Shown: piece after piece, positions 13,484 to 41,233 of the stretch | How positions within the stretch are numbered: position 1 is the first letter of the stretch | Layout: the number at the start of each line of letters is the position of its first letter | Assembly: GCF_006345805.1 (NCBI RefSeq) | Contig: NC_042998.1 | Span: 140,926,001 to 140,990,000 of the forward strand | DNA: 64,000 nucleotides | Reading direction: 5' to 3' | Origin: Octopus sinensis | Taxonomy: Eukaryota | Notes under the pieces: model-generated | The model's input: the letters and a program-made list of their open reading frames with translations, nothing else | Database searches by the model: none | Told to the model about the DNA's origin: nothing | Position numbers and translations under genes: made by a program

Positions 13484-13641
13484 CAGGTGTGGCTGTGTGG
13501 TAAGAAGCTTGCTTCCCAGCCACATGATTCCGGGTTCAGTCCCACTGTATAGCACCTTCGGCAAGTACTCTCTACTATAGCCTCAGGCTAACCACAGACT
13601 TGTGGATGGATTTTGTAGACGGAAACTGAAAGAAGCCCGTC

Positions 13642-13706
<65 letters not shown>

Positions 13707-13935
13707 CGTGCGTGAATGCTAGCGTGTGTGTGTCTGTATTTTTCTCCCACTAGTATTTGACAAGTGTTAGTGTTTTTACCTTCTCGTAACTTAGCGGTTC
13801 GACAAAAGACACGCTAGAATAAGTAACACGCTTAGAAAATAATAAGTAATGGGGTCGATTCATTCAACTAAAAGGTCTTCATGGCGGCTGTGCCCCAGCA
13901 TAGCCGCAGTGTAATGATAAACGATAAAAAGATAA
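13484..13935 (+). mobile_element. Bipartite SINE: family B tRNA head module + internal (TA)n(TG)n + family D 3' module
   Basis: Head caggtgtggctgtgtggtaagaagcttgct...ccgggttcagtccc (to 13642), microsatellite, then cttagcggttcgac...aataagt...ggggtcgat...ggcggctgtgccccagcatagccgcag. Confidence 0.8.
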
Positions 13936-13989
13936 ACGATAAAAAATAAACACACATCCTGGACCGCATCCGAAAAAGAGCCACTCAAC

Positions 13990-14527
13990 CGATCTGATGA
14001 TAATTTTGCTTGCCACTCCGTTACTTAGCCCGTCCGTAACGCTTCCACATGATTGGTTGAAGGGGGATTGTGATGGGGAGAGATGCGAGCGAAGTAGAGG
14101 GGAAATAGGAAGGCATGGGAAGGGTAGAGAGATGGGGAGGGAGAGTTGATGGTGAGTGAAATGTCTAATTTTTTAACTAAGTTTTTTCTTCCGTTACTTA
14201 GCCCATCTATAACAGTTTCACGTGATTATTTGAAAGGAAAGGCAAAGAGCGAAAGAAAAAGGAGAGAGAAAAAGAGGCTAAGGATAAGAGTGAGAGAGAG
14301 TGCTTTGTATTAAGTCAATAAAACTGTGCATAAAGGTGTATATATAAAGTGCATTAAGTAATCATCGTATTCCAATTTCCTTCACTTTTCAATGATTAGC
14401 AGACGAGGAACTATTTTTAGATACAGATACAACACAGACTACGCTTTCAGGTATTTTCGATAAAGTTTTCAGAAATAGCCCAGTACGTTTACCATTAATT
14501 CCGTGAAATATTCACGGGTTCCGCTAG
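13990..14527 (+). mobile_element. Non-autonomous Helitron, copy 2 (5' boundary uncertain)
   Basis: 3' hairpin CCGTGAA-ATA-TTCACGG (14501-14517) and CTAG (14524-14527) followed by T. Confidence 0.75.
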
Positions 14528-14754
14528 TTAGCATGTTAGCATAAAATTAATCGCAGATACTCTTCAGCCTCTGATACATGAGCGCGCTGTCTCTTCTCTT
14601 TGTCTCTTCTATCGCTACTATAATGGCTTCTAGTCGTTGGAGCTGATTGCGCTCATGCCATCCCTACTCAAGTATTGCCGTCCCATCATACTTTTTTCTT
14701 GTCTCATCTCTCTTGTGGAATCCACCACCCTCAGGCCACTGATCCCGATGGATT

Positions 14755-14971
14755 TTATTCTTTTACTTGTTTCAGTCATTTGACTGCGGCTATGCTGGAG
14801 CACCCCCCATAAAGGGATTTTAGTCGAAGAAATCGACCCCAGGACTTATTCTTTGTAAGCCTACTACTTATTCTATCAGTCTCTTTTGCCAAACTGCTAG
14901 AATAACAGGGACGTAAACACACCAAAATCGGTTGTTAAGCGATGATGGGGCAAACAAAAACGCACACAGAT

Positions 14972-15021
<50 letters not shown>

Positions 15022-15504
15022 TCGAGTTTCTATGATTGTATAGAACAATATACTAATGAGTGAAATTCCAACTTAGTCTGATTTTCACGTTTCATTATTT
15101 GCAATTTTTACAATTTTACAATTTTACAGTTTCACAATATTGAAATAAACTAGTGTTTTCATGCGTTACGCATTCATCAGGTTTATGTAGGTGCAGTCGT
15201 GTTCCACAGTTGACAGTCAGCTGTGGAACACGACTGCTCCTACATAAACCTGATTAATGCGTTCATCAGGTAAGTACTAGTGTATTTCAATATTGTAAAA
15301 CTGTAAAATTGTAAAGATTGCAAAATAATAAAACGTGATATACAACAGGCTTCTTTCAGTTTCCGTCCACAAATTCACTCACAAGACTTTGGTCGGCCCG
15401 AGGCCGTAGTGAAAGACACTTGCCCAAGGTGCCGCTCAGTGGGACTGAACCTGGAACCATGTGGTTGGGAAGCAAGCTCCTTACCACATAGCCACGACTG
15501 CGCC
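14755..15504 (-). mobile_element. Bipartite B-D SINE with a palindromic insertion in its internal microsatellite
   Basis: D module about 14755-14960, (CA)n, insertion about 15025-15338, B module about 15340-15504. Confidence 0.8.
15145..15186 (-). ncRNA. Type I hammerhead-ribozyme-like motif with canonical CUGAUGA/GAAA core
   Basis: Minus RNA AUAAAC CUGAUGA AUGCG UAA CGCAU GAAA ACAC UA GUUUAU: 6-bp stem I, 5-bp stem II, minimal stem III. Confidence 0.7.
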
Positions 15505-15584
15505 TGGTGGATTCTCAGCAATCCTTCCAAAGACCTGTTAACAAACCCGAGCAAAACCACAGCAGCCTTGTTTTCCAGAGCGTC

Positions 15585-16850
15585 ATTGCAAGTGGTAAAC
15601 CTTCGGACAAGTTAAAGGAAGACGTAATATGCTCCATTTTTAGAGGCAAAAGTAGAGCAGATGCTAAAAATTATAGGCCTATCTCTCTGACCTCACCTAT
15701 CAGAAAAGTCGTGGAATGAATTATCAGAAGGTATCTAGTCACGTTCTTTGAAGATAATTACTAACTGATACCCAACATAGTTTTCGATCGGGAAGAAGCT
15801 GCCTGACACAGCTCCTACAACACTACGACTGGGTGTTAAAACAGGTGCTCAGTTACTCAAATATGGATGTGATCAATCACGACTTTGCGAAAGTCTTTCA
15901 TAAAAATCGATCATGAAATGAAATGTCGCAAATTGCATGATCTCGGAATGGCTGCATGTTGTTTTAAAAGACTGAAGTCAAGCATTAGAACCCAATGAAA
16001 CTGCCTCCCAGGGAACAATTTTAGCATATGGAGAGTGGAGTTCCACAAGAACCCTAGAGATGATACGCACTGCAATATGATTTAAATGCTAAATATAAAC
16101 TGCTCAAAGTTAAATGAAATGCAGACAAAAAACACTGGACTCGGAAGAATTGCAGTACCAGAGACTCAATCAGTGTGTGACCCAGGCACTGACATGAGTA
16201 ATGATGATTCTTTTCATGTGCATATTACTAAGATTGTATTAAAATTAGTGAGGTGACCGGATGGATTCTAAGAACTTTCAGAACAAGAGTGTAGGAAACC
16301 ACGGTGGTCTTGTGAAGGACAATTTTCCTCCGCCGCCTAGAATATTACTCCAAATTATGATCATCATTTAGTATAAAATTAACAGCCGAACGTGAAGAAC
16401 TTCAACGCTACTACACGAAGAAAATTGCCTCGTTACAAGATTTCGACAATTCGGAAAGGCTAAAAAAATTACGATTCTACTCCTTTGACTGAAGACAGGA
16501 AAAATATCTCTGAAAAACCTGGAAGGATTTGCATCAAACTTTGGCATAGAAAGCTATACTTATCTCCGAATAGGTAGCCACTGTGTAGTGTCAAAGATCT
16601 CATCTTTGTCATCTAGATTTTGGATCAGATACTGCAATAGCTTAAGGTCCAAAGGCCCGCAGATTTTCAATATCCTTTAGACACATGCATGGTGCAGATA
16701 TAGATATCTCTAAAACGTAGTTGAGCCTTCTGTTGTCTAGAATTCCAAATAAGTCTACTTAGCAACAAGAAAAACAACCGAAGGCAGCAACTTAGAACTC
16801 CCTCATTCACGAAACTCTAACTGAAGGCGGAAGATCACAAGATGTGTAGC
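15585..16850 (+). mobile_element. CR1-clade LINE relic (RT and 3' region)
   Basis: ADAKNYRPISLTSPIRKVVE; QHSFRSGRSCLTQLLQHYDWVL; GWILRTFRTR; RLKKLRFYSF; NSLRSKGPQIFNIL. Confidence 0.85.
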
Positions 16851-16914
16851 AACACCAAATGCTGTGGTACCCGAGCATGACCACTGCTTACGGACTGAAA
16901 CAAGTTAAACATAA

Positions 16915-17538
16915 AACGCGCGCACGCACACACACACAAGCACATACACACACATGTACACATGCACAAACATACACAAACACACACATACAAACACATA
17001 CACACATACACAAACTTACTCAAACACACACACAAGCTTACACATACACACACATAAGCTTATGCATACACACACACAAACACAAGCATACACACACAAA
17101 CACATGTACACACACATTCACACACACATTCACATGTGCGCACGCGTGTTTTATGTAACAAACAGGATTTAAAAATATACTAATCAAGCACACATTTTAC
17201 GTCTTACTACACGTACAAGTCTATACGCACAAACATCTGTGTACGGGTACATACATACATACGCACACCACACACACACACACACACACATACACAGACA
17301 TGCATACGTATATACATACATATAAGTATACGTAGATATATATACACATACAAGCACATGCATACATGCATATGGCGGTGCCCCAGCATGGCCACAGCTC
17401 ATAAGCTGAAACTAGAATCAATCATACATACGCACGCACACACAAACATAAATAAATATATATATACATGTATGTATGTATGTATGTATGTATGTATGTA
17501 TGTATATACACACATATACACAGAGATACACACGTATA

Positions 17539-17607
<69 letters not shown>

Positions 17608-17630
17608 GTGTGTGTGTGTGTGTGTGTAAA
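16915..17630. repeat. Degenerate (CA)n/(ATGT)n/(TA)n/(GT)n array containing a short SINE-tail fragment (17375-17420)
   Basis: Directly visible; ggcggtgccccagcatggccacagctc matches the tail at 2772-2828. Confidence 0.85.
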
Positions 17631-17874
17631 AAGGCGGATAGTCGCCTTGCACGTGCGTTATTTATTAATTTTTTTTCTTGGTCAGCCACCTGCTATCAGT
17701 TCACTTTAGCTATCAGAGAGTGAGTTCCTCCCTCATACGTGCTGAATCGAATGGTGAAGTACCATCTTTCAGACTACTCGCCAAAGTTGAAGCTATAAAA
17801 TTTGTGCAAGCTACGTATATGTGTATCAAGGAACGTGAAAACTAGCAAAAAAAAAAAGGACTTTTTAAAATTCA

Positions 17875-18483
17875 TTTATTCTTTTACTTGTTTCAGTTCT
17901 TAGACTGTGGCCATGCTGGTGCACAGCTTTGAAGAATTTTTAGTCGAATGACTCGACCCCAGTACTTTTATTAAAAAAAAAACTGGTACTTGTTCTACCG
18001 TTTTTTTTTTTGCCGAGCCGTTGAGTTACGAGGACGTAAGCTCACGAACGCCGGTTGTTAAGCGGTAGTGGGACACACACACACACACACACATGCACGC
18101 GCGCACACACACACACACACACGCACACGCACACACAGTTCAAATTTATAGGAAAACAATGACGAAGATAAGTGTTGGAACAACAAGCAAGTGTATTAGT
18201 TTGATTTGGGGAAAAATGGAAAAGTATTTTATGTTTCAAGCCTACGCTCTTCAACAGAAAGGAATAAGAGGAAATAAAGAGAGAGAGAATAATAAAAAAA
18301 AACATGTTGAGTTCAGTGGTCCTGGGCTTCTATCAGTTTCTGTCTACCAAATCCACTCACAAGGCTTTAGTTGGCGCGAGGCTATAGTAGAAGACACTTG
18401 CCAAAGCTGCCAGGCAGGGAGACTGAACCCGGAACAACGTGGTTGGGAAGCAAGCTTCTTACCGCATAGCTACTGCTGCGCCT
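17875..18483 (-). mobile_element. Bipartite B-D SINE with an HHR-like unit inserted at its internal microsatellite
   Basis: D module about 17875-18075, (CA)n, insertion about 18138-18300, B module about 18325-18483. Confidence 0.78.
18228..18261 (-). ncRNA. Hammerhead-like motif, A6U variant
   Basis: Minus RNA CCUUU CUGUUGA A GAGC GUAG GCUU GAAA CA UA AAA; same family as 41113-41148. Confidence 0.45.
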
Positions 18484-18624
18484 GTAGATGTCTACAACAT
18501 TTTGTTTTTAACTTTTGGTCAACCCCAGGCCTCATAAGGCCGGTTACCTGGTTTCCATGATCTATAAATGACCGAGATTGTAATTCCTTTAAACTGGACA
18601 CCGACCCGTTGCAGGGTTCAAGGT

Positions 18625-19579
18625 AAGCATTTTTTGAAGAGAAGGAACAAGTCGTTTACATCGACCTCCCTACTTGACGGGTACTTTATTTTATCGAACC
18701 CCGTATGGAGAAAGGCAAAGTTGACCCCTGGGATTTAAACTCAGAATGTAAAGAGCTTGAAGAAATGTCGCTAAGTATTTTGCCAGACGTATTAACGATT
18801 CTGCTAACTCCCCACCTTATACCTACAACTAGCCAAAGCTATCCCAGTTAATTTATTTAACAAGCTGTGAATCTTGTCATCGAGTCTAAATCCAAACAGA
18901 TAATAAAGCAAATTCTAAGAGATTCCGTGCAGTCTAGTAAATATAGGATTCAAATTTTGGCACAGGCCCAGCAACTTCAGGGGAGGAGCAATGCCGTTTA
19001 CATTGATCCCAGTGCTCAGCTGATACTTATTTCATCGACCACGAAACGATGAAATGCAAAAATCACTTCCAGCAGAATTTGAACCCAGAACGTAAAGATG
19101 GACGAAATATCGCTAAGCATTTCGTCTGGCGTGCTAACGATTCTGCCAGTTCGCCACCTTAGGTTTAGCAAATATACAACGTAAAATTCTAATTTCTGCA
19201 TTTTCCCGAAGCAAATGGAATATAGTTCGACGTTTATAGTATCTCTTAGTTACTTGGCGACTATACTGTAATGCCTTTGAAAGAAACTAAATCGTAACCC
19301 ACCACTTACGTGATATTTTGGAAATGTTTTGCCATCTTAAGATTAGGAGATGATGTTTGTTGACTAATGTTTCTCAAGGTGAGTTCACGACAAAAACAAA
19401 GACAGAGTTTATCACAGTTACAATTATTTCTGTATCAAATCTGTTTATAAGGCCAGTTAACGCAAAAATTCCGTGTGAAAAGTTACGTAATATTTGCGGG
19501 TTCAAACATTAGAGTGATGCTTCGTCACACAAGTATCAAAGGTGCGCTCTTACACTGTACGTCTACAATAGGACTTTAC

Positions 19580-19624
<45 letters not shown>

Positions 19625-20320
19625 TTTTCGTGCTACTCCCAACGCCGTTAGCATTCTTAGGGAAACAGCAACACTTAAGACTTATTCCCATTTCTTTTTT
19701 TTTTCTAATACATACTTAAATCTATATATGATTCGATCATGGGGAAAATGGAAGTTTAGGAAGCCTAAGCTGTTTGTCAAGTTATAGGCATCGTAAATGA
19801 TGTAGAATGATTTCAACCGAGAATTGAAACCACCAAATCACGAACTCCCGACTTTTCTATAGCGTTGGGTACTTTAGCGCAATTAAGAGTTTAAAAGACA
19901 GCTACTATATTACAAATTTTGAATAGATGAATAAATCGAATAAATCGATTACATTCCCATCTTCCCAATACTTATTTAATCGACTACCAGAAGGATAAAA
20001 AAAATTAAAGTCGGAATCAGTGGGATTTGAATTCCGAAAGTAAAGAAGTGTACTAAATAATTTTATTCAAATTTTTTTTTCCAGTTTCTGTTACCCATCT
20101 GTCCTTCGGGAAATAACTTTTTAATTTTGGTACAAAACAAGCAATTTTGAGGGTGCGGAAAAGCCGATTACATCAATCCCAGTGCTGAACTGATACTTAT
20201 TTTTATCGACCTTAAAAATGATGAAAGGCAAAGTCGAAACGGGGAGCATTTGAACTCAAAGCGTAAAGAGCCAGAAGAAAAAAGCTACTGGCGCGGTAAC
20301 GATACTACCAGCTCGCCACC
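18625..20320 (-). mobile_element. Cluster of four family A SINE copies (about 18625-18818, 18947-19160, 19925-20050 partial, 20120-20320)
   Basis: Each carries aaaggcaaagtcgac/gaatttgaactc and ctaacgattctgccagctcgcc homology. Confidence 0.8.
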
Positions 20321-21613
20321 GTTGTGCAATAAATAATATAAATGCATAAAGCTTCTTTTGATTAGATACAAGATGAATTTTTCGCAGAGTATTGATTCAC
20401 TGAATTGTATCAAACTCTGTTATTTTAGTGCTACGTATTTGATTGCTCCTGGAGGGATGAAAGACAAAGGTGATCCTAGCAGGGACGAACATACATCTGT
20501 ATAAATTTCTTCCCAAAACACACACATACCATCACCACCACCACCACTACCACCACCACCACAACCACCACCACCAATAACAACAACAACAATAGTAACA
20601 ACACACAACAAAACTGGTCGCCCGAGAAGAAAGCCGCTATGAACACAAGGATTTCCTTGGATTAAAGGAACGAGCACAGCTGTTTACTCCCTTTACAAAT
20701 GGCACGATAGAATGGTTTTTATCGTCAACCGAACCATTTCCATTATATGCTAGTACAATCCTGCAAATTGGTCGGAACACTTTCTAGTGTTCGACTATCA
20801 TCACATATAAACCTCAAAGGACGTGTTAATACTAAAGCATTTATCACATGTCGCATTCGACATAAACCGAAATAAAACATCATGGAACATTCAGCATCTA
20901 AAGATAACAGCAAAACCATTTTGCACTCAATCCAATTCTTTCCTTTATCGCACCACGTACGCACAAAAATACAATGTTACGGGGTTGCTGTTATCTTTTA
21001 TTTTTATTTTTATAAGATACATAACTCATTCGAAACATTTGCTTTTTTCTTTTCCACAAGAATTTTGTTTAACTTGCAATCCGAATGCTAAATTTATCGA
21101 TTGAAACGCAGGAGTTTCCCTGAGGCTAAACCTTTCAATGACAAAGGTTATTAATTCATTCCTTGTCGGATCCATTCACTCAAATACTTAACTTCAAATT
21201 TTGTCAACTGTGAACCTCCGAAACTCTCACTCATATGTTCAGCCTCATAGTCAGTTGAACTGAAGTCGCAATCAATCATTCAATCACTCAATCACTTAAT
21301 TATCCTCAAATTTTGCCGACTCAGGTCAACAACAACTTTCAATTTCTTAACAACCCTTGAAAGTACTTTTCCCCCTAATTCAGATCAACAGCCATCCACT
21401 CAAATATCTTAACATTCTCACTCACTCACTCACTCACTCACTCACTCACTATTTCACTCACCCTCAGAGTCTTCACCTTCAGAACCACAACTATCTAATC
21501 ACTCACTCAAATTATTCAACCACATTATCTACAACATTGAAGTCATAACCAGTCACTCAGTCACTTGCTCACCCTCAAAAATTGCAAACTCATGGTCACT
21601 ACTACCCCTCTGG

Positions 21614-21845
21614 GGAGGCGCGTGGCTTTGTGGTTAGGGTGTGTGACTTATGATCGTAAAATTGTGGTTTCGATTCCCAGACCGGTCAACACATTGTGTT
21701 CTTGAGCAAAACACTTCATTTCACGTTGCTCCAGTCCACTCAGCTGGCAAAAATGAGCAATCCTGCGGTGGATCTGCGTCCCGTCCAAGTCGGGAATATA
21801 CACGTCATGGAAACCGAGAGACTGGCCCTTATGATTTGGTATGAT
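21614..21845 (+). mobile_element. tRNA-headed SINE family C
   Basis: ggaggcgcgtggctttgtggttagg...ggtttcgattcc head; central ttgtgttcttgagcaaaacacttcatttcacgttgctccagtccactcagctggcaaaaatgag loosely resembles CORE/Meta-type central domains. Confidence 0.8.
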
Positions 21846-22659: not shown

Positions 22660-22670
22660 TGTGTGTGTGT

Positions 22671-22714
<44 letters not shown>

Positions 22715-22829
22715 GGGAGAGAGAGAAAGAGTGTTTGATATGTACACGCGAGAGCGAGAGAAGCAGAGTGAGAGTGAGAAGGTTAGAAAGATAGACCAAT
22801 ACAAATAACTATGTGTGTGTGGAGTGTGT

Positions 22830-22867
<38 letters not shown>

Positions 22868-22879
22868 GTGCGTGGGTGC

Positions 22880-22946
<67 letters not shown>

Positions 22947-22965
22947 CGTTCGTGTCTGCCTGCGT
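22660..22965. repeat. (GA)n and (GT)n microsatellites
   Basis: Directly visible. Confidence 0.9.
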
Positions 22966-24025: not shown

Positions 24026-24114
24026 AGTTTCGTTATGGCAGCTCACCCTGCCCAATCATATGGTTTCTGCTGTAATTGCTCTTAGTCTTTTTAATTGTAT
24101 TATTTTTCTATTTA

Positions 24115-24500: not shown

Positions 24501-25239
24501 AAGCGCCGTGACCCTCAAACACAAGTGATGGTGATGTTAACATGTTGCTTCCTACACGATAAGTTGGAAACGCATCACTGTCTCTTAAACATCTCCCTAA
24601 ATCTCTCATCTACTGACTCCAAGTGCCAGACCCTGATATATTGCTTCAGCTGATAAGTTAAAGCACATGAGTGAGTGGTGTTGACACTGGCTGTGGAGAA
24701 GCTGCAGCAATGGCCAATGATCACTAACCAGGACAGAGTAGTCTCAAGAAGACCAACGACAAGGTGTGCGTGACTGAAGATGACCCACTCTATATTTCAT
24801 GGACATCAGCTTGTAGTCGACAAAGACAGCTCCATTTACAGTCTCCGTCCAATATGCAAGTGGATAGGCTTTGGGTTAGTATCCTGTCCTCTCAAACTAC
24901 GAAAACAGTTTGTAGTGCAAAAGCATCACATCAACTGCGGCTGTTGAACGATCCTGCTGGAGTACTTTCACTCTTTTGTCTGTCGCTCAACATGTACACA
25001 CCTAAGTCTAAGTCAGTCAAAAATACTACACACTTTCCAGACCGGGAATTGAACCTACAATCTTATGATCGTGAGCACATTTGTCTAACCAGTAAGCTAC
25101 TCCCCTTCTCAGTAGAAATGAAAAAGAGAAGTTAACACGGAATTCGAAATGGTGGAGAGTGAAACGAATATTTATAATGACTTAATACATAATTAATACT
25201 TAATGCAGAGTTTCTTATATTAATACATAATTATATTCC

Positions 25240-25460
25240 TAACCACATGGTTCCGGGTTCAGTCCATGCATGACACCTTGGGTAAGTCACGGGCCAACTA
25301 AAGCCTTTTGAGTGGATTTGGTTGATGGAAACGTATGTATGTATATATGTATATATCAAAGTACAGGTGATGAGTTGAAACAATTGTAGGTCTGGTCTTG
25401 TCAAAGTATTAATGAACTTTTATTAATCTTATCTTCATCTTCTCTCTCTCTCTCTCTCTC

Positions 25461-25522
<62 letters not shown>

Positions 25523-25741
25523 TATTCGAGACAAAACCACTATTTTGCAAAACAAACAAGGAAAGACTTAATTAATACATAAATTTTAATTAAAATTTTA
25601 TGTATTAATTAAGTCTTTCCTTGTTTGTTTTGCAAAATAGTGGTTTGTCTCGAATAATATTTATAATATTTTACTATAAATCGATTTAATCCTAAATCTG
25701 ATTTTTTCCCTGTAAATTTGGATTTATTCCCTAATATTTAT

Positions 25742-25793
<52 letters not shown>

Positions 25794-26045
25794 GTCTGTG
25801 TGTGTGTGTGTGTGTGTGCGCGCATATGTCTTCCTGTCTATGTTTGTCCCTCACCACTGCTTGACAATTGGTGTTGGTGTGTTTACGTCCCCGTCACTTA
25901 GCGGTTCGCCGAAAGAGACCGATAGAATAAGTACCAGGCTTAAATAAAATATGTCCTAGGGTCGATTTGTTTGACTAAAAGCTCTTCAAGGCAGCACCCC
26001 AGTATGGCTGCAGTCATATGACTGAAACAAGTAAAAGATAAGAGA
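25240..26045 (+). mobile_element. Bipartite B-D SINE with a palindromic insertion in its (TA)n tract
   Basis: B remnant about 25240-25335, (TC)(TA)n, palindrome 25517-25662, (TA)n(TG)n, D module about 25830-26045. Confidence 0.7.
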
Positions 26046-27924: not shown

Positions 27925-28012
<88 letters not shown>

Positions 28013-28407
28013 AATACGCAGACACACAGGCGCACGCAGAGACACACGCGCACGCAAACACACACGCACACACACTCACACACATATATACACATAACAG
28101 CTTAAATTATCTTACATAAGAAAATACAGATATATTAATGTGGAATGTACACGCTCATTTACGACATAAAATCAACAATGAAACGCAATTCATTTGGGAC
28201 AACTATTCCTATCTGTCACAAGCATGTGAGAAAAAGACAAGCTCAGGTCGTATCAAATGACAAATGTTAGTCTTTCAATCTTCTCTTATAACATAAACTA
28301 TATTTTGAAATACCCGAGTACTTTCTCCTTCCATTTTGATTTCATGAACTTGAAAATTCTCTCTCCTTTCGTACGACTTAAAAAAAAATCCCATGCATTT
28401 ATTCTAT

Positions 28408-28730
28408 GTGGAGGCACGTGGCTTAGTAGTTAGCATGTCACAATCATGAGGTAGTAAGTTCGATTCCCGGGCCGGGCTGTGCGTTGTGTTCTTGAGCAAG
28501 ACACTTTATTTCACGTTGCTCTAGTTCACTCAGCAGTAGAAATGAGCTGTGACACCACTGGTACTAAGCTGTATCGACCTTTGCCTTTCCCTTGGATAAT
28601 ACCGGTGGCGTGAGATATGCATGGGCGACTGCTGGTCTTCACAAATAACTTTGCCCGGGCTTGTGCTTCGGAGGGGAACTTTCTAGGTACAATCCTATGG
28701 TCATTAATGACTGAAGAGGGTTTACCCTAT
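28408..28730 (+). mobile_element. tRNA-headed SINE family C
   Basis: gtggaggcacgtggcttagtagttag...aagttcgattccc head and the same central domain as 21614. Further minus-strand copies near 22060-22292, 25020-25112, 26330-26518 and 27150-27453. Confidence 0.8.
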
Positions 28731-28799
28731 TCCGCTTTAAAATAGGTGTTATTGACCTCCACGCCGCATGTCTTTGATAGAGTTAAAGTATAAAGTATT

Positions 28800-29150
28800 C
28801 CCCAGACCCAGTCAGGTGAGGAGTATGGCTGAGATATTAAACTAATTTCATAGTGTCGTAAATATAGCGAAGCGGCCGAAATGGGGTTGCTCCGAAGAAA
28901 TCTCCGGAGTAATGTTACTCGACAGGACAGGTAACTCGGAAATCAGGGAGTCATTCCAGTTAGAGCCGCTACTTCTCTGAAAAGCGGTCATAGCTCTGGT
29001 CCTACGAGAATGTAAATTAGAAAGCCGTAGGAAAGGATCGCAAGATGGATTCCTCAAAGCAAGCCAATCGACAGGAGATCTAGGGCTAGACGAAAAACGA
29101 GATGGTTGGATATCATCCATAGATTTAGTTGTCTACGTTCGGAATCCATT
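28800..29150 (+). mobile_element. RTE-clade LINE 3' fragment
   Basis: AAEMGLLRR...GVMLLDRTGNSEIRESFQLEPLLL...RRSRARRKTRWLDII. Confidence 0.65.
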
Positions 29151-30059
29151 TGGAAAGTGAAATGTTTTTTTTTTCTGGTAGCACCATATGGAAGATGTGT
29201 CTGAGGACTTTATCACACGACCTTTACTGTTTGGTGAGTGGGTAAAATGGATAGATGGATGTGGCTAACTTACAATTTATCCAATTTGACGAATGTCGAG
29301 ACTTATTACAATAGCAATAGATGATATAACTGACCTAATGTCTGCTAGAAGATCCTTTACTTTCAAGAGAAAGAATGCTGAATAGATGAGGTTGAAGAGA
29401 AGTTCAATGTCATCACGACTCAATATTGACGAAATCCAAAATTGTGATTTAATAAGTTTATGACTAGATAATGAACTAAAATACATAATGAGCAATAAAA
29501 AATTAGAGGGACGACAAACTTATGATGTGAAAAAATTTGAATGGTTGTACAGACAACAGACTCCATCAAACAATCATCATATTAACATTGGTAAATAGAA
29601 AATATGATATCAGGGAACTTCTCAAACCTAACGTCAAGCCCAAAGGGAAGCATTAAAACTGTCAGAATCCAGAGCTGCTCTTCGTAGCTAAAAGAATTTG
29701 AAGGACCTAGACGCCATTTTCTTCAACCACCAGTCCTAAATAAACTACGCATCGTCTTCCAAACACATATGGGACATATAGAAAAAATGAAAGATATTAC
29801 TTCATGGCAAATCATTGCCGCAGCTATACACTTGGTGAATATAGTGAGGGGTGGGCGCTAATTCTGTTTATCCCCCCCCCCAAAACAGTAGGTCAAAGCT
29901 AATGCCAATTTGACGTCACGGTAGAAATGTTTACAAATGAATGTGTACGGCACTTTACAACATTAAAGCTGTTCATTAATAAATTGCAACCAATGAACAA
30001 AAATTGTGACCTGATCAAAGAACAAGACAATAGACAATCATCAAGTGTTTAATTTCAAA

Positions 30060-30437
30060 AAGGTAGAATATTTTTTCTTTGATACAACGGAAGGAACTGG
30101 AAAAACATTGTCAACTTGTAGTAAAAATTTTGTTAAAAGCAGCGAATTATACCTTCGGCTTCGTTTTCATGTGTTTGCTGCATATCTGCATAGAGGCGAT
30201 GCATTCTATGCTCTATTCATGATTTTCCTCAACATGGAGATAAACAAAAATTCTGCCTACAATTTCAGCGAGGGAACAGAAATAGTAGAGATCTAAGATG
30301 ATGCAGAATGATTGTTGAGAATGAGCGTATAATGTCTCGCAAAGAATCATTGGAAGTTCTGGACAAGACACAATAAGTTTTCCATGGAAACAGAAAGATA
30401 CTAAGAGGAGCTATTAATTTTGGTTGGAGATTTCATT
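30060..30437 (+). mobile_element. Helitron Pif1-like helicase fragment
   Basis: YFFFDTTEGTGKTL (Walker A; compare FLDAPGGTGKT) ... IMSRKESLEVLDKT ... LVGDF. Confidence 0.8.
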
Positions 30438-31938
30438 GCTCTGATGAAATATCTGGTCTACTACCCTCCGTCAAGACCTTTAAACGTCTTCCCAGACACA
30501 TCATTTCTCTGTTGAGCTTCCCGTTAATCTTAAATATGTTTATTCTAATAGCTTCTTTCCTCGAACTGCTGCTCTCTAGAACTCACTATCATCATTTTGT
30601 TTTCCTTTGGCCTTTGATATTCAATTCTTTAAGCTTTCTGTCAATCAACATTTTTTTAATTTGAAGGTCTCTCCTTTTCTGTCGTTGTAGTTCCTTATAC
30701 TACAGCGACCCCAAGCCTTGTATGAGAGAGAATCGTATAAAAAAAAAAAGAAACAAACATTATCCGTTATTCAATAAAGCACAGGAACAGATGAAATTAA
30801 GGCTTGTTAAAACTCATCGTGTCTTAAGAGAAATTCCACTTATTTATCAATATGAGAGTCCAATCTTTTGCATCAATTATCTGGGCAAAGAAGTTATCTG
30901 AACACCACGATGATAAAGTTAAAGTAGGTGTACAAGGAAGAATTGATATAGCGACAGCGACATAGCTAGAGTGTGAGACGCCCGGGGCGGCCCTTGAGTT
31001 TGCCGTTCCCCACAGCAATGCAACCTATATAGAGCTATATAGTAGGCTCTAAATTACCACTCTATAAAAGCATTGGTAGGTGCGAACAGCCTCTCGCCCT
31101 TTCACCCCCAATCCTGCTACGCATATAGACAGTATAATAGTATTATTTGTTGACGAAGTTAAAGAAATGGTCTTTTCGAACGTTTGAATGATAAATAGTT
31201 GTATGAAAGAATAATGATATTAGCGCCGAAGAACAGTGGTTTCGACGCCATTCACACAACTAGTTGCAGCTGTTATTTGGTACGGGTTACCTCCACAGTT
31301 AAAATGTGTTAATTAATAAAGCAGTGTTAATTGAATTAATTGACACGGTTTAATAGTAGAAGAGGTTTTTACCAGTTAGCTATTGTAAAATTGGCAATTA
31401 ACACAGCTTCTTGCGCTAGAAAAGAAAAAATAATAAAACCTAAGAGGTACAGACTCATCAAGCTTTATAGTGACAAATGTTCGTGCGACTATTTAAATCT
31501 TTGAAACTGTTAAACTGTCACAAGTTAAAAGACAGCTCTTATTCGTTTTTTAATGTGGATGTTTTTAAAAACTCTTTCTAAGCTTTTTTTTAAATATATT
31601 ATTATGCTTTAAAAAATCTCTTCAGATTTTTATACTTTGAAAGTCAAAAGTCTACAAAATATCCTTTTAAGTAAAAGAAATTAATTTAAAAACTTTTATC
31701 TGAAACGAATTATGATTAGGTGATTTACGGCTACAGCGCATTATCTTTATATACAAATATATTTTGCTTGTATTTGAAGTGAAAAAATATGTTTTCTTTG
31801 TATTTAAATACATTAGTTTGCTTTTTCTTACTGAAAGTTTAAAACGCAGTTGTTCAAATAATGGACTTATTCAGAATGACCATGGTTCTTTTTCAAGAAT
31901 TTGTTCACCACTCGAGCGTGAGTGACCTTTATCTTGCT

Positions 31939-32016
<78 letters not shown>

Positions 32017-32017
32017 A

Positions 32018-32175
32018 GGAGGCGTGGCTGTATGGTAAGAAGTTTGTTACCGAACCAAAGGCTACGGCTTCAATCACACTGTGTCGCACCTTGGGCATAT
32101 GTCATCAATTAATCTCTTTGGCCGACCAAAGCCTTGTGAGAGGATTTGGTAGACGGAAACGGAAAGAAGCTTGTC
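32018..32175 (+). mobile_element. SINE family B module whose (TA)n tail hosts the full PLE
   Basis: ggaggcgtggctgtatggtaagaag...gccgaccaaagccttgtgagaggatttggtagacggaaacggaaagaagc, then (TA)n 32176-32217. Confidence 0.85.
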
Positions 32176-32208
<33 letters not shown>

Positions 32209-32283
32209 ATATATATAAAGAAATGAAGAAAATGCTGACAAAATAATTTAAGTAAGGGAGAGTGTATTTAATTAGGTGAAAGC

Positions 32284-32323
32284 TCTTTTTACCGGTTGCG
32301 CATTTGTTATGCTTATCAAAAGA
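32284..32323 (-). ncRNA. Atypical type I hammerhead-like motif in the PLE 3' terminal repeat (U3-A8, C13)
   Basis: Minus RNA UCUU UUGAUAA GCAU AACAA AUGC GCAA CCGG UA AAAAGA: stem II GCAU/AUGC, palindromic CCGG at stem III, U/A-rich stem I. Confidence 0.55.
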
Positions 32324-33267
32324 TATTTTTTTAAGAGAGATAGAGTTCCTTCCTGATAGATTTTTTTCTCTTATCTGACTTTATGTTGGGTTTGCTGTCT
32401 CTTATATGTGAAAAAAGAGGCTCCAGAGTTGTTTAAGATTTGCTTGGTTTCGCGCCTAAAATTTCTTGTGGACAATGGTTAATACAATTTTGATTGGTCA
32501 TTATAAAGGGGTCACGTGAATGTTTGAATGGAAGTTGGTGTTGGGGTAGGAAAATAGGCTCCAGAGATGTTAAAATTTGGCTAGTGTCGCGCCTAAAATT
32601 TCTTATTGGTCATAATAAAGAGGTCACGTGGATGTGGTCATAATAGAGAGGTCACGTGAATGTTTAGAATGAATGTTGCTGTGGGTGGTGTATGGAGTTT
32701 TCGAAAATAGCGTTGTTGAAAATTCTTATTGTTCAGGCTGGTCAGTAGACGTCATGTGGATATTTTAAATAGCTTTTTAGCGCGTAGTTAAGGAGTGTAT
32801 TTTCCGCTTGACTGAATTTGAGCTGGATAAGTAAGTTCGTTTAGGACAGGAAGAGCTATATGTATGTATGTGCGCGCGCGCGCGCGCGTGTGTGTGTTTA
32901 TATGTATGTTGGGGCGCGCGCGCGTGTATATATGTGTGCGTGTGTGGGTACAATTTTCAATATTTATAGTTCTGCTGGCCTTGTGCCTGTATCGGGAAGC
33001 AACGTGTATGTGTGAAGTCAATATTTACAGTCATTTCCAAAAAATAGTGTTGGATGTTTTGCACCCGTATCAAATTATGTGTATGTGTGGAACCATATAT
33101 TTGCGTGTGTCATGGTGTTAATATCTGGGTAAAAGTGTGTGTAGGTGTGTGCAGGTGTAAGTGTGTTTGTTGTGGGTTCGTGTTAGGGGGATGTGTTTAG
33201 AAGTGGTCTGTATTTATTAATAAGGTGGGATTCCATGGTTATTCGCTGGGTATGAGTGGCATTGTCT

Positions 33268-36200
33268 TTAAATTTGTAGAGGGGGAAAGATTCTAAAATT
33301 GGGATGAAGTTGTGCGGCACAGGTATCAATATGTGCACTAAGTGCTATTTTTCTGTATTCCTGTATTTTTATTTGGGATCTGTGGACAGTCATGCGTTGG
33401 CGGAGGCTATTTTTAGTTTGGCCTATATAGTGTTCATTACAGCCCGAGCAAGTTAAGACATATACTAGGTTTTCTGATGTGCATGTGAAGTTGTGTTTTA
33501 CTGTGAAACGTTGTCCTTGTTTAAAAAGGAATTCCGGACCTTCTATTAGGTTGATGCATATACCACAGTTGGGTCTATTGCATTTGTTTACTGTGGGTTT
33601 AGTTGTTGTGGTTGGCAGTACTTTGGCATTTGTTAGGATGGTTTTCAATGATTTGGGTTGCCTTTTGCTCTTTATGATTTCGTGTGTTAGGAGAATTTGG
33701 TTCATTCTGTAGTCCTTTTTTAATACAGGAATGTTCTGGAGGATGGTGTCAAAAGCTTCATTGTTGAGGAGGTTGTGTGTAGAGATGTATGGTAGAGTAT
33801 GGAGTTTCGATGTAACAGGTTTAGGGCGTCTAAGTTCCTGTGTGCTGAGTTTTAGGGCGCGTTGGATCCCATTGTCAATTAGTGACGTGGGGTAATCCCT
33901 GCTTGTTAATGTGTCCTTAAGTTCTTGTAGACGTAAGAGACGGGTGTTTTTATTGGAGACTAAAGTGCAAATTCTCTTGGCTAAGTTGTAGGGAATGTTA
34001 ATTTTAACGTGTCTAGGGTGGCATGAATTGAAAGGGAGGTATTGCTTGGAGTCTGTGGGCTTGTAGTATATGTCTGTTTCTATTTTTTTGTTGTGAATTT
34101 TAATGAGGATGTCGAGGAAGGGAATTTGTTGAGGGCTGTATTCCATTGTGAAAATAATGTTTGTGTTGAGCCCATTTATAAGGGTGTGAAATTCTTTAAG
34201 CTTCTCGATGGTTTCGGGCCAAAGGATGAAGCAGTCATCAAGATATCTCTTCCAGTTCTTCTCTATGTGTGTGTGGAGAGTGGTGCCAAATTGGTTAAGA
34301 ACGTTATTATAGAGGGTGATTTCCAGGTATCCCATGACTAGGTTGGCCTAAGTGGGAGCTGTTTTCGTTCCCATTGCCGTCTCTGATTTCTGTCTGTAGA
34401 ATTTGTTGTTGAAGGTGAAGAAATTATTCTCTAAGATGAATTTGAGTCCTTCTAAAATAAATTCCTTTTTGATGCGGTGTGGGAGTTCGTTGGAGTAATT
34501 ATCCAGCCAGAATTGGATAGCTTCTATTCCTATATTGTGGGGGATGTTGGAGTAAAGATTAACTACATCGAATGTTACTAGCAGGGTTTGTTCAGCAAGA
34601 AGTGTATTGGGGAGGTGGTTGAGCATATCTAGATCGTCCCTTATGTAGCTTTTAATGTGTTTGAGGAAGGGCTTGAGAAGGGTATCAATGAAGTTGCTAA
34701 GGCGGTGGGTTTCGCAAGCGGGACCTGATATTATAGGTCTCAATTTGAGGTCATTTGGTGAGGGGACATTGATTACAGAGTTTGTGGCTTCCTTGCATGC
34801 CTTACTTATTAATTCGCTTTTATGAATTTTGGGAATACCGTAGAAGAGGCTGGTTTTACTAGTGAAATATGTGATGAAGTTGAATTCTTTGTTAGTGAGT
34901 TCTTCTTTGTGGGGGTTGATCAGGGTTTTTAAGTTTCTCATAATTTTCTGTTGATTGTAGTGTTCAGCCTTTTCGTAATATGTTCCATTTTCCAAGGTGG
35001 AGAGTGCTAAGTTGATATAGTATTCTGTCTCCATTAAGACTACTGCACTTCCTTTATCGGCCTCTTTAATGGTGATAGATCTTTCATTTTTTTTTTTTAG
35101 TTCTTCCCACTCTTTCTTGTTTGTGGTTTGGTTTGTGTTTTGGTTTGTGTAAGTGTTGGTAGGGGAAGTTTGTAATGTGCTCACAGAATTCGTCTAGGAT
35201 TTTATTTCTACCTTTTGGTGGGGTGTAGTTGCTTTTATTTCTAGCTAGTGACTCATCCTCATTGTGCTGGTCGAATAGTTCCTCACTAAATCGTAATTTT
35301 CTACAAAATTCTGTAATGTCTTCCTTCATTTCGTAGTAGTTTGGACGTGGGGGGTGGGGGTGAATTTAAGACCTTTGGAGAGTAAGTTGAGAAGGTTGGG
35401 GTTGGGTTCTGTATTGGTCAAATTGATGACTTTAATTAGTTTCTGTTTCTCTTCCCTGTCCTGTGTTATTTTGTTTGCCTGTATCTGTGTGCTGTGTCTA
35501 AAAAATGGTTGGGGTAGAGGGGTTGTCTGTTGGTGTTAAGAGGTCCTGTGTGTTTGTTATATTCCTTGTTGTGAAATATGGTTCGGGTTCGTGGTTGTGG
35601 ATAGAATGGGGTGTTCCTGTATTGCGGGTGTTGGTGTGTGTTTCTTTGTGTCGTGATGGATTGTGGTGATATGAGTGGCCTACGTGGGTGCTTGTATCGA
35701 GTGGTATGGGCTTGTTGTGTATTGTGAGAGTTGAGAAAGTGAAAATTACCTTGTTGTCCCCTCGTGGTGTGGATGTTGTTGTGTCTATCCTGGTAGTGGA
35801 ATCCTCTTTTATTTGTTAATAAGGTATTCGAGTAGTTGTTGAGTTGTTGTGTATAGTGTCTCCTTGAAGGGGGAAATTCGTTAATGTAATTCTGGTGGTG
35901 AGGGTTTCCAGGGTTCTTGTTCCTCCTTATGGACGTGGGGTAAGAAGGTACATCTTCAATATGCTGTTTCCTTCTTTTGTTCGAGGTTGGAGGGTTGGCG
36001 GAATAGTTGTGTATATCTCGGCCTTGTTGTTGTTTCTAATCATTTTCCAGAAGGAGAACTTTCTGTCTCTGAGGGATTTGTTCCATTCTGGGATTATATG
36101 ATTTTTCAGTTTGTATGAATCAATTTGACATGGTTCTTCTTTGTTTTTGGCTGGGTTGGTGGTGGTGAAAAAGGTGTGGATCGTATCACACAGAGTTTGT

Positions 36201-36360
36201 AGCTTATCGCCGATTTCGGAGGGTTTGTGTCCGGTAATGGTTTCCTCATTAGTGGAGTCCAATTTGTTGACTAGTACAGAGAGGTTGTGTTGATGTTTTT
36301 GAGTTCCTGTAGGATTTCTTCGTTTAAGTTGATTAGGGTGGTTTCAGTTTTTGTAGGCAT
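33268..36360 (-). pseudogene. PLE polyprotein (RT + Cys linker + GIY-YIG endonuclease), disrupted by several frameshifts and one in-frame TAG
   Basis: ATG at 36360; LKLRPIISGP, LVTFDVVNLYSNIP, TAMGTKTAPT*ANLVMG, WKRYLDDCFILW, YYKPTDSKQYL, CNRPNCGIC, LVYVLTCSGCNEHYIGQT. Confidence 0.93.
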
Positions 36361-36563
36361 TTTCTGTATCTCGTGCGGGGATATGATATAAAAAAGGAGA
36401 TGTGGAACACGAGTTGTGATATATAAAAAAAGGAAATGAAGAAAATGCTGACAAAAAAGAACTTTCACCTAATTAAATACACTCTCCCTTACTTAAATTA
36501 TTTTGTCAGCATTTTCTTCATTTCCTTTTTTATATATCACAACTCGTGTTCCACATCTCCTTT

Positions 36564-36611
<48 letters not shown>

Positions 36612-41148: not shown

Positions 41149-41158
41149 GAACACGATG

Positions 41159-41233
<75 letters not shown>

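What the first reader, a model, noticed from the sequence alone, without database searches (positions are those of the whole stretch)
13484..36567. A bipartite SINE whose internal microsatellite acts as a landing pad for Penelope-type insertions
Seen: SINE B-D is tRNA head module + (TA)n/(TG)n + 3' module, and is uninterrupted at 13484-13935. In four other copies a PLE or PLE-terminus-like unit sits at that microsatellite: the HHR palindrome (15085-15338), the HHR unit (18138-18300), the 146-bp palindrome (25517-25662) and the full PLE (32218-36567, in the TA tail of a B module). Other HHR or palindromic units (10505, 41023, 53789) also sit in TA tracts. Inference: this PLE lineage targets TA-rich microsatellites, and the SINE disperses such targets genome-wide. 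That makes a SINE-PLE host/guest system I do not recognise as described.
Basis: partly seen in the sequence, partly recalled or inferred. Interest (0 to 1): 0.75.

Follow-up and report, generated by a model that had tools for sequence, protein, structure and literature searches.

The report
Penelope elements nested in SINE microsatellites
In this octopus-type genome a common SINE carries a built-in TA/TG microsatellite, and Penelope-like retroelements, which are already known to prefer TA repeats, have landed there several times; the pattern is real but is an expected by-product, not a new system.

Summary
The SINE is one unit: a tRNA-like/CORE-like head (B), a (TA)n(TG)n seed at a fixed position, and a LINE-derived tail (D). 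It is intact at 13484-13935. Three other B-D copies are split exactly at the microsatellite, and a B-only copy has a 4.3-kb Penelope-like element (PLE) in its TA tract.

The guests:
- The PLE (RT plus C-terminal GIY-YIG, decayed) is certain.
- The 15021-15341 insert holds the window's only canonical hammerhead.
- The 18138 unit belongs with 10506 and 41025 to one family of 5'-truncated, hammerhead-like retroelement ends.
- The 146-bp palindrome is PLE-like by analogy only.

A (TA)n preference is a published property of Neptune-type and Naiad PLEs, and six of six related PLE insertions I fetched abut TA tracts. Nothing shows a specific SINE-PLE partnership:
- Only 5 of 59 TA tracts in about 140 kb of octopod DNA are SINE-adjacent.
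- PLE-type units also sit in non-SINE TA tracts.
- An Octopus vulgaris SINE nest also holds a LINE fragment and palindromes of unknown class.
- Occupancy does not differ significantly in the window.

Verdict: a further example of known microsatellite targeting; modest interest.

The parts
13484..13935 (+). Intact B-(TA)16(TG)n-D SINE: B 13484-13643, microsatellite 13645-13714, D 13721-13935
   Evidence: B consensus ends ...GAAGCCCGTCGT followed by ATATAT in all 8 aligned copies
14759..15495 (-). SINE copy split at its microsatellite by a 320-bp insert (15021-15341)
   Evidence: D 14759-14925 and B 15342-15495 by blastn; sequence
15021..15341 (.). Head-to-head (inverted) pair of PLE-type terminal fragments. 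The left arm is longer (about 190 nt) and the right arm ends at an 'atata' remnant next to B
   Evidence: arms 15106-15325, 86%; reading
15145..15186 (-). Canonical minimal type-I hammerhead: AUAAAC CUGAUGA AUGCG-UAA-CGCAU GAAA ACAC UA^GUUUAU; the partner arm's copy (+, about 15243-15290) is decayed
   Evidence: 0 such hits in 30 shuffles; not found by Rfam
17900..18473 (-). SINE copy split between (CA)n and the B end by unit u18
18138..18300 (-). u18: 5'-truncated retroelement 3' end with a hammerhead-like motif at 18261-18226 (CUGUUGA+A, A6 to U)
   Evidence: 79% identical to 41028-41160; alignment A1; motif table
41025..41160 (-). u41: same family as u18, flanked by (TA)n on both sides, no SINE module adjacent; hammerhead-like motif 41148-41113
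10506..10660 (-). u10: diverged member of the same family, 3' end abutting (TA)50; hammerhead-like motif 10640-10606 (CCGACGA+A, U4 to C). Its helix I covaries with u41 (GUUU/AAAC against CUUU/AAAG)
25236..26041 (+). 5'-truncated SINE copy (B fragment 25236-25332, D 25835-26041) with about 500 bp of inserted material at the microsatellite
25517..25662 (.). 146-bp near-perfect palindrome. It directly follows (TA)n 25465-25516, and a second TA tract (25745-25779) lies 80 bp downstream. Class unproven (PLE terminus dimer or TIR element)
   Evidence: 97% self-complementarity; no hammerhead; no match to PLE sequences
32020..32217 (+). B-only SINE copy (32020-32170) plus its TA tract (32176-32217); no D module downstream
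32218..36563 (-). Penelope-like element, about 4.35 kb, decayed. RT-EN ORF 35184-33268 with one in-frame TAG. CX4CxxC linker (KCNRPNCGIC) and Cys pair inside the GIY-YIG core
   Evidence: RVT_1 E=2e-7, GIY-YIG E=2.6e-4; tblastn and stops; homologues in Argonauta and Octopus at 57-62%
32285..32324 (-). Decayed PLE hammerhead-like motif with U3-A8 core (UUGAUAA), palindromic loop CCGG, and GCAA in place of GAAA. It is positionally equivalent to the intact motif in the O. vulgaris relative (L002 11723-11767)
36393..36563 (.). 5' terminal structure of the PLE insertion: an inverted copy of the 3' terminus followed by a short direct copy, so that both outer ends of the insertion are 3' termini
   Evidence: 36454-36524 is the reverse complement of 32220-32290 (98.6%); 32220-32243 = 36433-36456 (100%); self-palindrome 81%; sequence
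36564..36611 (.). Right-hand (TA)n flank of the PLE, followed by (TC)n and unrelated sequence
39821..40225 (.). D module (-) 39821-39972, compound CA/TG microsatellite, then an isolated LINE/D-type 3' tail (+) about 40160-40225
53789..53880 (.). 29-bp inverted arms around (TA)16, followed by (TG)n; unexplained, not shown to be PLE-related

Best explanation
The window comes from an octopod-type cephalopod genome that is very rich in simple repeats.

The SINE. An abundant SINE has three parts: a pol III-type tRNA-like head with a CORE-like body (B), a short (TA)n(TG)n seed, and a tail (D) that it shares with a partner LINE. It retroposes as one unit. In individual copies the seed grows by slippage into a real TA/TG microsatellite.

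The PLEs. Penelope-like elements with a C-terminal GIY-YIG endonuclease and a CX2-5CxxC linker (Neptune/Nematis type), and 5'-truncated or non-autonomous copies made by the same machinery, nick (TA)n tracts and prime reverse transcription there. Priming from both nicked strands gives the inverted 5' copy, or in the short cases a head-to-head palindrome of two 3' ends.

The consequence. Any sufficiently long TA tract is a target, so SINE-borne tracts are hit along with the much more numerous TA tracts elsewhere. The SINE is a passive, minor supplier of targets, not a dedicated host.

What is shown: the SINE anatomy, the position of every insertion, the PLE domains, the terminal inverted/direct structure, one canonical hammerhead, and TA at the ends of all related PLEs examined. 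What is inferred: cleavage of TA by the endonuclease, twin priming, the PLE origin of the hammerhead-less palindromes, and slippage expansion.
For: - B-D is one unit. Ten copies in three sources have a constant B end and a constant D start. Two O. vulgaris copies have nearly identical 34-36-bp TA/TG spacers.
- The D tail equals the 3' end of a truncated LINE.
- All four interruptions are at the microsatellite.
- PLE identity.
- Terminal structure.
- TA lies at the ends of 6 of 6 related PLE insertions. One is an O. vulgaris copy with no inverted 5' copy whose true 5' end still abuts (TA)19.
- One canonical hammerhead at 15186-15145, none in shuffles.
- The u-family has a constant 3' end at a microsatellite and variable 5' ends, as target-primed reverse transcription (TPRT) products do.
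- Its motif shows features published for PLE minimal hammerheads: an unpaired base between positions 9 and 10.1, a G10.1-C11.1 pair, and compensatory change in helix I.
- (TA)n is listed as the preferred PLE target in PMC8557442.
- The PLE insertion is younger than the SINE copies: 98.6% identity between its 3' end and the inverted copy, against about 80-85% among SINE copies.
Against: - No Rfam hammerhead hit at any threshold.
- The u-family cores each break one invariant position, and the window PLE's motif has GCAA for GAAA, so none of these can be called active ribozymes.
- The 146-bp palindrome, 53789 and the O. vulgaris palindromes have no demonstrable PLE ancestry.
- At 15021 and 18138 almost no TA remains at the junctions. 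The TA origin of those two sites rests only on their position in the SINE.
- The PLE-bearing SINE copy lacks D, which simple insertion does not explain.
- The sample is one window plus six short loci, five of them chosen because they contain a PLE.
Confidence: 0.75

Rival explanations
1. One reading: a specific SINE-PLE host/guest relationship, in which the SINE's microsatellite is a preferred or co-evolved landing pad and the SINE materially shapes where this PLE lineage lives in the genome.
For: Counting the two copies whose TA tract is gone, 4 of 5 SINE microsatellites in the window carry a guest, against 2 of 11 non-SINE TA loci. An independent O. vulgaris SINE has a 2.25-kb nest in its TA tract.
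Against: - Restricted to loci that still have a TA tract of 16 bp or more, the contrast is 2/3 against 2/11, which is not significant (about 0.18, hand arithmetic).
- Only 5 of 59 TA tracts are SINE-adjacent.
- None of the five fetched PLE relatives sits next to a SINE head.
- The O. vulgaris nest holds a LINE fragment and hammerhead-less palindromes.
- 6 of 10 B-D copies are intact.
Confidence: 0.1
2. The hammerhead-less palindromic units (25517-25662, 53789-53880, and the O. vulgaris palindromes L002 1148-2235 and 2530-2670) are TA-targeting DNA-transposon derivatives (Tc1/mariner-type MITEs or foldback elements), not PLE termini. On this reading the TA tract is a shared hot spot for several transposon classes.
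For: They are near-perfect inverted repeats flanked by TA, the target dinucleotide of Tc1/mariner elements (established knowledge). They have no hammerhead and no similarity to any PLE sequence in hand.
Against: - The window's own PLE shows that TA-flanked palindromes of this size (171 bp) are made by PLE insertion.
- The units end in T-rich runs before TA, as the PLE 3' ends do.
- No transposase relative was found, though none was searched for genome-wide.
Confidence: 0.3
3. The TA tracts flanking PLE insertions are tails brought in or synthesised by the element, as with the microsatellite tails of some LINEs, and are not pre-existing targets. Because both outer ends of these insertions are 3' ends, TA would then appear on both sides.
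For: In the window PLE, L004 and L005 both outer ends are 3' termini and both abut TA.
Against: - The SINE consensus already has TA at exactly the position where the insertions lie, and the intact copy has (TA)16 there.
- The O. vulgaris and Argonauta L001 copies have TA directly upstream of a true 5' end with no inverted copy.
- The target preference is published.
Confidence: 0.07
4. The split SINEs are artefacts of assembly or of recombination between microsatellites, not insertions.
For: The window is 7.7% perfect simple repeat. TA and CA tracts are classic sites of mis-assembly. The O. bimaculoides locus has N-gaps bordered by TA tracts.
Against: B and D halves keep the correct order, orientation and spacing around compact, well-defined inserts in four independent copies and in a second species' assembly.
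Confidence: 0.04

Closest known systems
Neptune/Nematis-type (canonical C-terminal EN+) Penelope-like elements with a (TA)n insertion bias (Arkhipova 2006, as cited in Craig et al. 2021, PMC8557442)
   Same: RT plus C-terminal GIY-YIG with a CX2-5CxxC linker and a Cys pair in the GIY-YIG core; inverted and direct terminal copies; a hammerhead-type motif near the 3' end; insertion in (TA)n.
   Different: Clade placement by phylogeny was not done. This copy is decayed and its hammerhead-like motif uses the U3-A8 core and carries a damaging change. One flank of its TA tract is supplied by a SINE.
PLE minimal hammerhead ribozymes (Cervera and De la Pena 2014, PMC4209133)
   Same: Type-I minimal motif with a 1-bp helix III and a short loop; an unpaired base between positions 9 and 10.1; a G10.1-C11.1 pair; the U3-A8 core covariant; dual motifs on opposite strands 100-700 bp apart; mostly solitary truncated copies.
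   Different: Only one motif in the window has a fully canonical core. Activity is untested. The Rfam models do not score any of them.
Animal non-LTR retrozymes (non-autonomous hammerhead-bearing PLE derivatives; bioRxiv 10.64898/2026.07.22.740005)
   Same: Short non-coding hammerhead-bearing units related to PLE terminal repeats and presumably moved by PLE machinery.
   Different: Retrozymes are defined by tandem arrays and circular RNAs. The units here are solitary or inverted, with variable 5' ends, and look more like 5'-truncated PLE 3' ends.
Octopus OR2 / CORE-SINE family (Ohshima and Okada 1994, as cited in PMC4758252), and SINEs with internal microsatellites such as the Haliotis MESC SINE with (CA)n (PMC4758252)
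   Same: A tRNA-like head with A/B-box-like motifs; a CORE-like 'CCTTGGGCAAGT...AGCCTC' body (resemblance recalled from memory); a LINE-shared tail; an internal dinucleotide repeat that expands in some copies.
   Different: Identity with OR2 could not be checked because no reference sequence was available. The internal repeat here is a compound (TA)n(TG)n.
Microsatellite-specific non-LTR retrotransposons, and nested-insertion hot spots in general
   Same: A retroelement uses a simple repeat as its target, so any repeat-bearing element becomes a nest.
   Different: The targeting enzyme here is a GIY-YIG nuclease of a PLE, not an AP-type or restriction-like LINE endonuclease.

Membership tests
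Penelope-like element (canonical, C-terminal EN+) | Reverse transcriptase domain | tested here: met
   Pfam RVT_1 E=2e-7, 31.4 bits against a cut-off of 29.6; 174 homologues, many with PF00078
Penelope-like element (canonical, C-terminal EN+) | GIY-YIG endonuclease C-terminal to the RT, with the CCHH-type Cys pair inside the core | tested here: met
   Pfam GIY-YIG at residues 573-612: 22.6 bits on the 355-aa ORF (at the cut-off) and 21.7 bits on the full ORF. 'LVYVLTCSGCNEHYIGQT' can be read in the translation. The domain's C-terminal part appears truncated.
Neptune/Nematis-type PLE | CX2-5CxxC Zn-finger-like linker between RT and EN | tested here: met
   'KCNRPNCGIC' lies about 40 residues upstream of GIY; definition from PMC8557442
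Neptune/Nematis-type PLE | Placement inside the clade in an RT phylogeny with reference PLEs | not tested
   No reference PLE set was available in the tools
Penelope-like element (canonical, C-terminal EN+) | Pseudo-LTR or tandem/inverted terminal organisation | tested here: met
   Inverted plus short direct copy of the 3' terminus at the 5' end; large inverted copies in relatives L004 and L005
Penelope-like element (canonical, C-terminal EN+) | Hammerhead ribozyme motif in the terminal repeat | tested here: inconclusive
   The window copy has a U3-A8-type motif with GCAA for GAAA and a weak helix I. The motif is intact at the equivalent place in the O. vulgaris relative, and a motif with a canonical CUGAUGA core can be read by eye near each 3' end of the Argonauta L005 insertion. 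Rfam is negative.
Penelope-like element (canonical, C-terminal EN+) | (TA)n microsatellite target preference | tested here: met
   TA at the ends of 6 of 6 insertions examined. This is not a genome-wide test.
PLE-type minimal hammerhead ribozyme | Conserved core CUGANGA...GAAA (or the U3-A8 covariant) with helices I and II and a NUH cleavage site | tested here: met
   Met in full for 15186-15145. u41/u18 (A6 to U), u10 (U4 to C) and the window PLE (A13 to C) each fail one invariant position.
PLE-type minimal hammerhead ribozyme | Score above threshold with curated Rfam hammerhead models | tested here: not met
   No hammerhead family listed at the gathering threshold or at E<=10 on 15020-15345. 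None appears among the 150 best of 163 matches at E<=5 over the whole window; 13 lower-scoring matches were not shown.
PLE-type minimal hammerhead ribozyme | Self-cleavage (as a dimer) | not testable with these tools
   Needs in vitro transcription of dimeric constructs
Non-LTR retrozyme | Tandem head-to-tail arrays of hammerhead-bearing monomers | tested here: not met
   The units are solitary or inverted; no tandem copies in the self-comparison
tRNA-derived CORE-SINE (octopus OR2 type) | tRNA-derived head | tested here: inconclusive
   ARAGORN finds no tRNA and the Rfam tRNA model gives no hit at E<=10 on 13470-13650. A-box-like TGGCTGTGTGG and B-box-like GGTTCAGTCCC are visible in the 8-copy consensus.
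tRNA-derived CORE-SINE (octopus OR2 type) | CORE central domain, or identity to the OR2 reference | not tested
   Resemblance recalled from memory only. OR2 is listed as a CORE-SINE in PMC4758252.
tRNA-derived CORE-SINE (octopus OR2 type) | 3' tail shared with a partner LINE | tested here: met
   The D tail aligns with the 3' end of a 5'-truncated LINE fragment in O. vulgaris and with the isolated tail at 40160
TIR DNA transposon / MITE (for the hammerhead-less palindromes) | Terminal inverted repeats with a TA target-site duplication and a related autonomous transposase element | tested here: inconclusive
   Inverted repeats are present. A TA duplication cannot be discerned inside a TA tract. 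No autonomous partner was searched for.

The most novel reading that the evidence does not exclude
After controlling for TA-tract length and purity, SINE-borne TA tracts in octopod genomes are hit by PLEs and their hammerhead-bearing derivatives significantly more often than other TA tracts. This could be because SINE pol III transcription or chromatin keeps them accessible. SINE amplification would then have driven where, and how much, PLEs accumulated: a real three-layer dependency of LINE to SINE to PLE.
Probability: 0.08. Interest if true: 0.55.

Novelty: new member of a known kind. Interest (0 to 1): 0.3.

Why it matters
If the passive reading is right, this is a clear illustration of how one repeat family (a SINE with a slippage-prone seed) creates targets for another (TA-seeking PLEs). 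That helps explain nested repeat clusters and the difficulty of assembling and annotating cephalopod genomes.

It has two practical consequences for annotation:
- Octopod PLE hammerheads, many of them with the U3-A8 core, are invisible to the Rfam models.
- Split SINEs should be rejoined across their microsatellite before copies are counted.

It would matter more only if a genome-wide test showed enrichment beyond what TA length alone predicts.

Tried and rejected
- Rfam at the gathering threshold, at E<=5 on the whole window and at E<=10 on two small regions gave no hammerhead and no tRNA. Nearly all hits (apart from the 5S rRNA) were microsatellite or palindrome look-alikes of miRNA, snoRNA and similar families.
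- ARAGORN found no tRNA.
- Unmasked self-BLAST was swamped by microsatellites. It was redone on a masked copy.
- MAFFT could not put the short hammerhead motifs in register. I replaced it with an explicit segment table checked against the sequences.
- The units (HHR palindrome, u-family, 146-bp palindrome) have no nucleotide matches in the four related loci then in hand, L001-L004. L005 and L006 were not searched with them.
- An exact-sequence look-up of the window's PLE ORF found nothing on record, so the source species is not identified beyond 'octopod-like'.
- Pfam gave nothing for the LINE fragment's C-terminal piece. Its LINE nature rests on my reading of the conserved motif.
- Retrozyme membership was considered and rejected because there are no tandem arrays.
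- An attempt to translate L002 421-1128 directly failed on stop codons.

Full report
**Setting.** The window is AT-rich eukaryotic DNA (about 38% G+C), and 7.7% of its bases lie in perfect simple repeats. The one protein-coding retroelement in the finding has its best relatives, at 57-62% identity, in Argonauta hians, Octopus vulgaris and O. bimaculoides, followed by bivalves. The SINE modules recur at about 80-85% identity in O. vulgaris and O. bimaculoides loci. The source is therefore an octopod-type cephalopod. The exact species was not identified.

**The SINE.**
- blastn with the two modules of the intact copy finds B and D in the right order and orientation at 13484-13935 (+), 14759-15495 (-), 17900-18473 (-) and 25236-26041 (+). 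It also finds B alone at 32020-32170 and, weakly, at 9198-9326, and D alone at 39821-39972.
- In O. vulgaris (L002) three copies are contiguous, with a 15-36-bp spacer. In two of them the spacer reads almost identically, 'cgtcgTATATATGTATATATATATGTATGTGTGTGT...'.
- An alignment of eight B modules from three sources ends uniformly in GAAGCCCGTCGT followed by ATATAT.
- B-(TA/TG seed)-D is therefore one retroposed unit, and the microsatellite is intrinsic. It is short in most copies and expanded to (TA)16(TG)n in the intact window copy.
- The last 50 nt or so of D align with three other sequences: the 3' end of a 5'-truncated LINE fragment in O. vulgaris, an isolated tail at 40160-40225, and the tail behind a 5S-rRNA-like head at 2777-2962. 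D is therefore the LINE-derived tail.
- ARAGORN and Rfam do not recognise the head as tRNA. Only the A-box-like and B-box-like motifs are visible, and the link to octopus OR2 and the CORE-SINEs (PMC4758252) rests on my memory of the CORE motif.

**The insertions.** Ten B-D copies were seen: four in the window, four in L002 and two in L003. Six are intact and four are interrupted. Every interruption lies at the microsatellite, which is about 15% of the SINE length. By my arithmetic that is roughly 6e-4 under uniform insertion.

**The full element.**
- The ORF has a CX4CxxC linker and a Cys pair inside the GIY-YIG core. This is the architecture of canonical EN+ Penelope-like elements (PLEs) of the Neptune/Nematis type as defined in PMC8557442.
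- The copy is decayed: one in-frame TAG and an N-terminal region full of stops.
- Its 3' terminal 71 nt recur inverted at 36454-36524 (98.6%), followed by a short direct copy. This forms the 171-bp palindrome 36393-36563, so both outer ends of the insertion are 3' termini, the known PLE 'inverted 5' copy' structure.
- The insertion sits inside a TA tract. (AT)n 32176-32217 begins at the SINE's own TA position, directly after the B end, and (TA)n 36564-36611 lies on the other side.
- No D module follows, and simple insertion does not explain that.

**Hammerheads.**
- Rfam reports none at any threshold.
- A descriptor of my own (helix I, CUGANGA, helix II, GAAA, minimal helix III, UH) finds exactly one perfect motif in 64 kb, on the minus strand at 15186-15145: AUAAAC CUGAUGA AUGCG-UAA-CGCAU GAAA ACAC UA^GUUUAU. 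None was found in 30 shuffles. It lies in the left arm of the inverted repeat that splits the SINE at 15021-15341. The right arm's copy is decayed.
- Allowing the U3-A8 core covariant finds intact motifs near the 3' end of the O. vulgaris PLE (L002 11723-11767) and as an inverted pair in O. bimaculoides (L003 2875-2921 and 3097-3143). A damaged one sits at the equivalent place in the window PLE (32324-32285, GCAA for GAAA).
- The units at 18138-18300, 41025-41160 and 10506-10660 form one family. Each carries CNGNNGA plus an extra A, a GAGC/GCUC helix II, GAAA, a two-base loop and a four-base helix I that covaries between copies (CUUU/AAAG against GUUU/AAAC). Each also has one substitution at an invariant core position.
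- These traits are all described for PLE minimal hammerheads in PMC4209133: the extra base after A9, the G10.1-C11.1 pair, palindromic loop 3, the U3-A8 variant, and dual motifs on opposite strands.
- The family has a constant 3' end that abuts a microsatellite ((TA)n for u10 and u41, the SINE's (CA)n for u18) and variable 5' ends. That is the signature of 5'-truncated target-primed retrocopies.

**What remains unproven.**
- The 146-bp palindrome (25517-25662, 97% between arms) directly follows a TA tract inside a split SINE. It has no hammerhead and no similarity to any PLE in hand.
- By analogy with the PLE's own 171-bp terminal palindrome it could be two short 3' ends joined head to head. 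A TA-targeting TIR element is an equally simple reading.
- The structure at 53789 has its TA tract in the centre and is unexplained.

**Target preference.**
- I fetched five loci encoding relatives of the PLE protein: O. vulgaris L002, Argonauta hians L001 and L005, and two unnamed ENA assemblies, L004 and L006.
- In all five, every end that can be read abuts (TA)n: both ends in four loci, and the 3' end only in L006. The O. vulgaris and Argonauta L001 copies have TA directly upstream of a true 5' end with no inverted copy. This argues that the TA is target, not an element-borne tail.
- It matches the published '(TA)n, preferred targets' of PLEs and the hypothesis that the CX2-5CxxC linker mediates the preference (PMC8557442).

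**Is there a SINE-PLE system?**
- In about 140 kb of octopod sequence, 59 TA tracts are 16 bp or longer and only 5 are SINE-adjacent.
- None of the five fetched PLE relatives lies next to a SINE head.
- Two of the three u-family units are in non-SINE TA tracts.
- The single O. vulgaris nest (B 209-367 ... D about 2730-2880) holds a truncated LINE 3' end, a 1.1-kb palindrome and a 140-bp palindrome, none with a hammerhead.
- Within the window, TA loci of 16 bp or more are occupied in 2 of 3 SINE-borne cases and 2 of 11 others (one-sided Fisher about 0.18, hand arithmetic).
- The data fit a passive model. The SINE carries a TA seed, slippage lengthens it, and TA-seeking PLE machinery, probably along with other elements, hits it as it hits any TA tract.
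- The enrichment test that could overturn this needs a whole genome and could not be run here.

**Comparison and novelty.** Each component is known:
- TA-targeting Neptune-type PLEs;
- PLE minimal hammerheads, including the U3-A8 variant;
- inverted terminal copies;
- SINEs with internal microsatellites, for example the Haliotis MESC SINE (PMC4758252).

I found no paper describing SINE microsatellites as PLE nests, but this follows directly from the known properties. I rate it a new example of a known kind, of modest interest.

Noticed in passing
window 2777-2962 (minus strand): A 5S rRNA-like sequence (Rfam 5S_rRNA, 61 bits, full model length) is followed after a 12-nt linker by the same LINE-type 3' tail as the D module. 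It lies between (ACAT)n and (CTAT)n repeats. It is either a 5S-headed SINE using the same LINE partner or a one-off 5S/LINE chimeric retrocopy.
   Followed up: partly
L002 11723-11767; L003 2875-2921 and 3097-3143; window 32285-32324: Octopod PLE hammerheads use the U3-A8 core covariant (UUGAYAA) with palindromic loop 3 (CAUG, CCGG, CAUCGAUG). The Rfam models miss them entirely. The variant was described before for Schistosoma Cercyon PLEs (PMC4209133).
   Followed up: partly
L002 (O. vulgaris OX597819.1) 209-2880: A SINE whose TA tract holds a 2.25-kb nest: a 5'-truncated LINE 3' end (421-1130), a 1.1-kb palindrome (1148-2235) and a 140-bp palindrome (2530-2670), each bordered by TA runs.
   Followed up: partly
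window 39821-40225: A minus-strand D module and a plus-strand isolated LINE/D-type tail face each other across a compound CA/TG microsatellite. The TG part of the SINE microsatellite may therefore also collect LINE-tail insertions.
   Followed up: no
window 53789-53880: 29-bp inverted arms (93% complementary) enclose (TA)16 and are followed by a long (TG)n. This is the reverse geometry of the other units and is unexplained.
   Followed up: no
window 25357-25440: Between the B fragment and the (TC)n(TA)n tract lies 'GGUGAUGAGUUGAAACAAUUGUAGGUC', which looks like a hammerhead core that has lost helix II. It may be a further decayed PLE remnant in the same nest.
   Followed up: no
window 32413-32685: The PLE's roughly 1-kb 3' untranslated region contains a tandem duplication of about 135 bp (76% identity).
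   Followed up: no
L003 18286-18520 (O. bimaculoides): A SINE copy in which B position 109 is joined directly to the middle of D, with the microsatellite deleted. It sits beside assembly gaps bordered by TA tracts.
   Followed up: no
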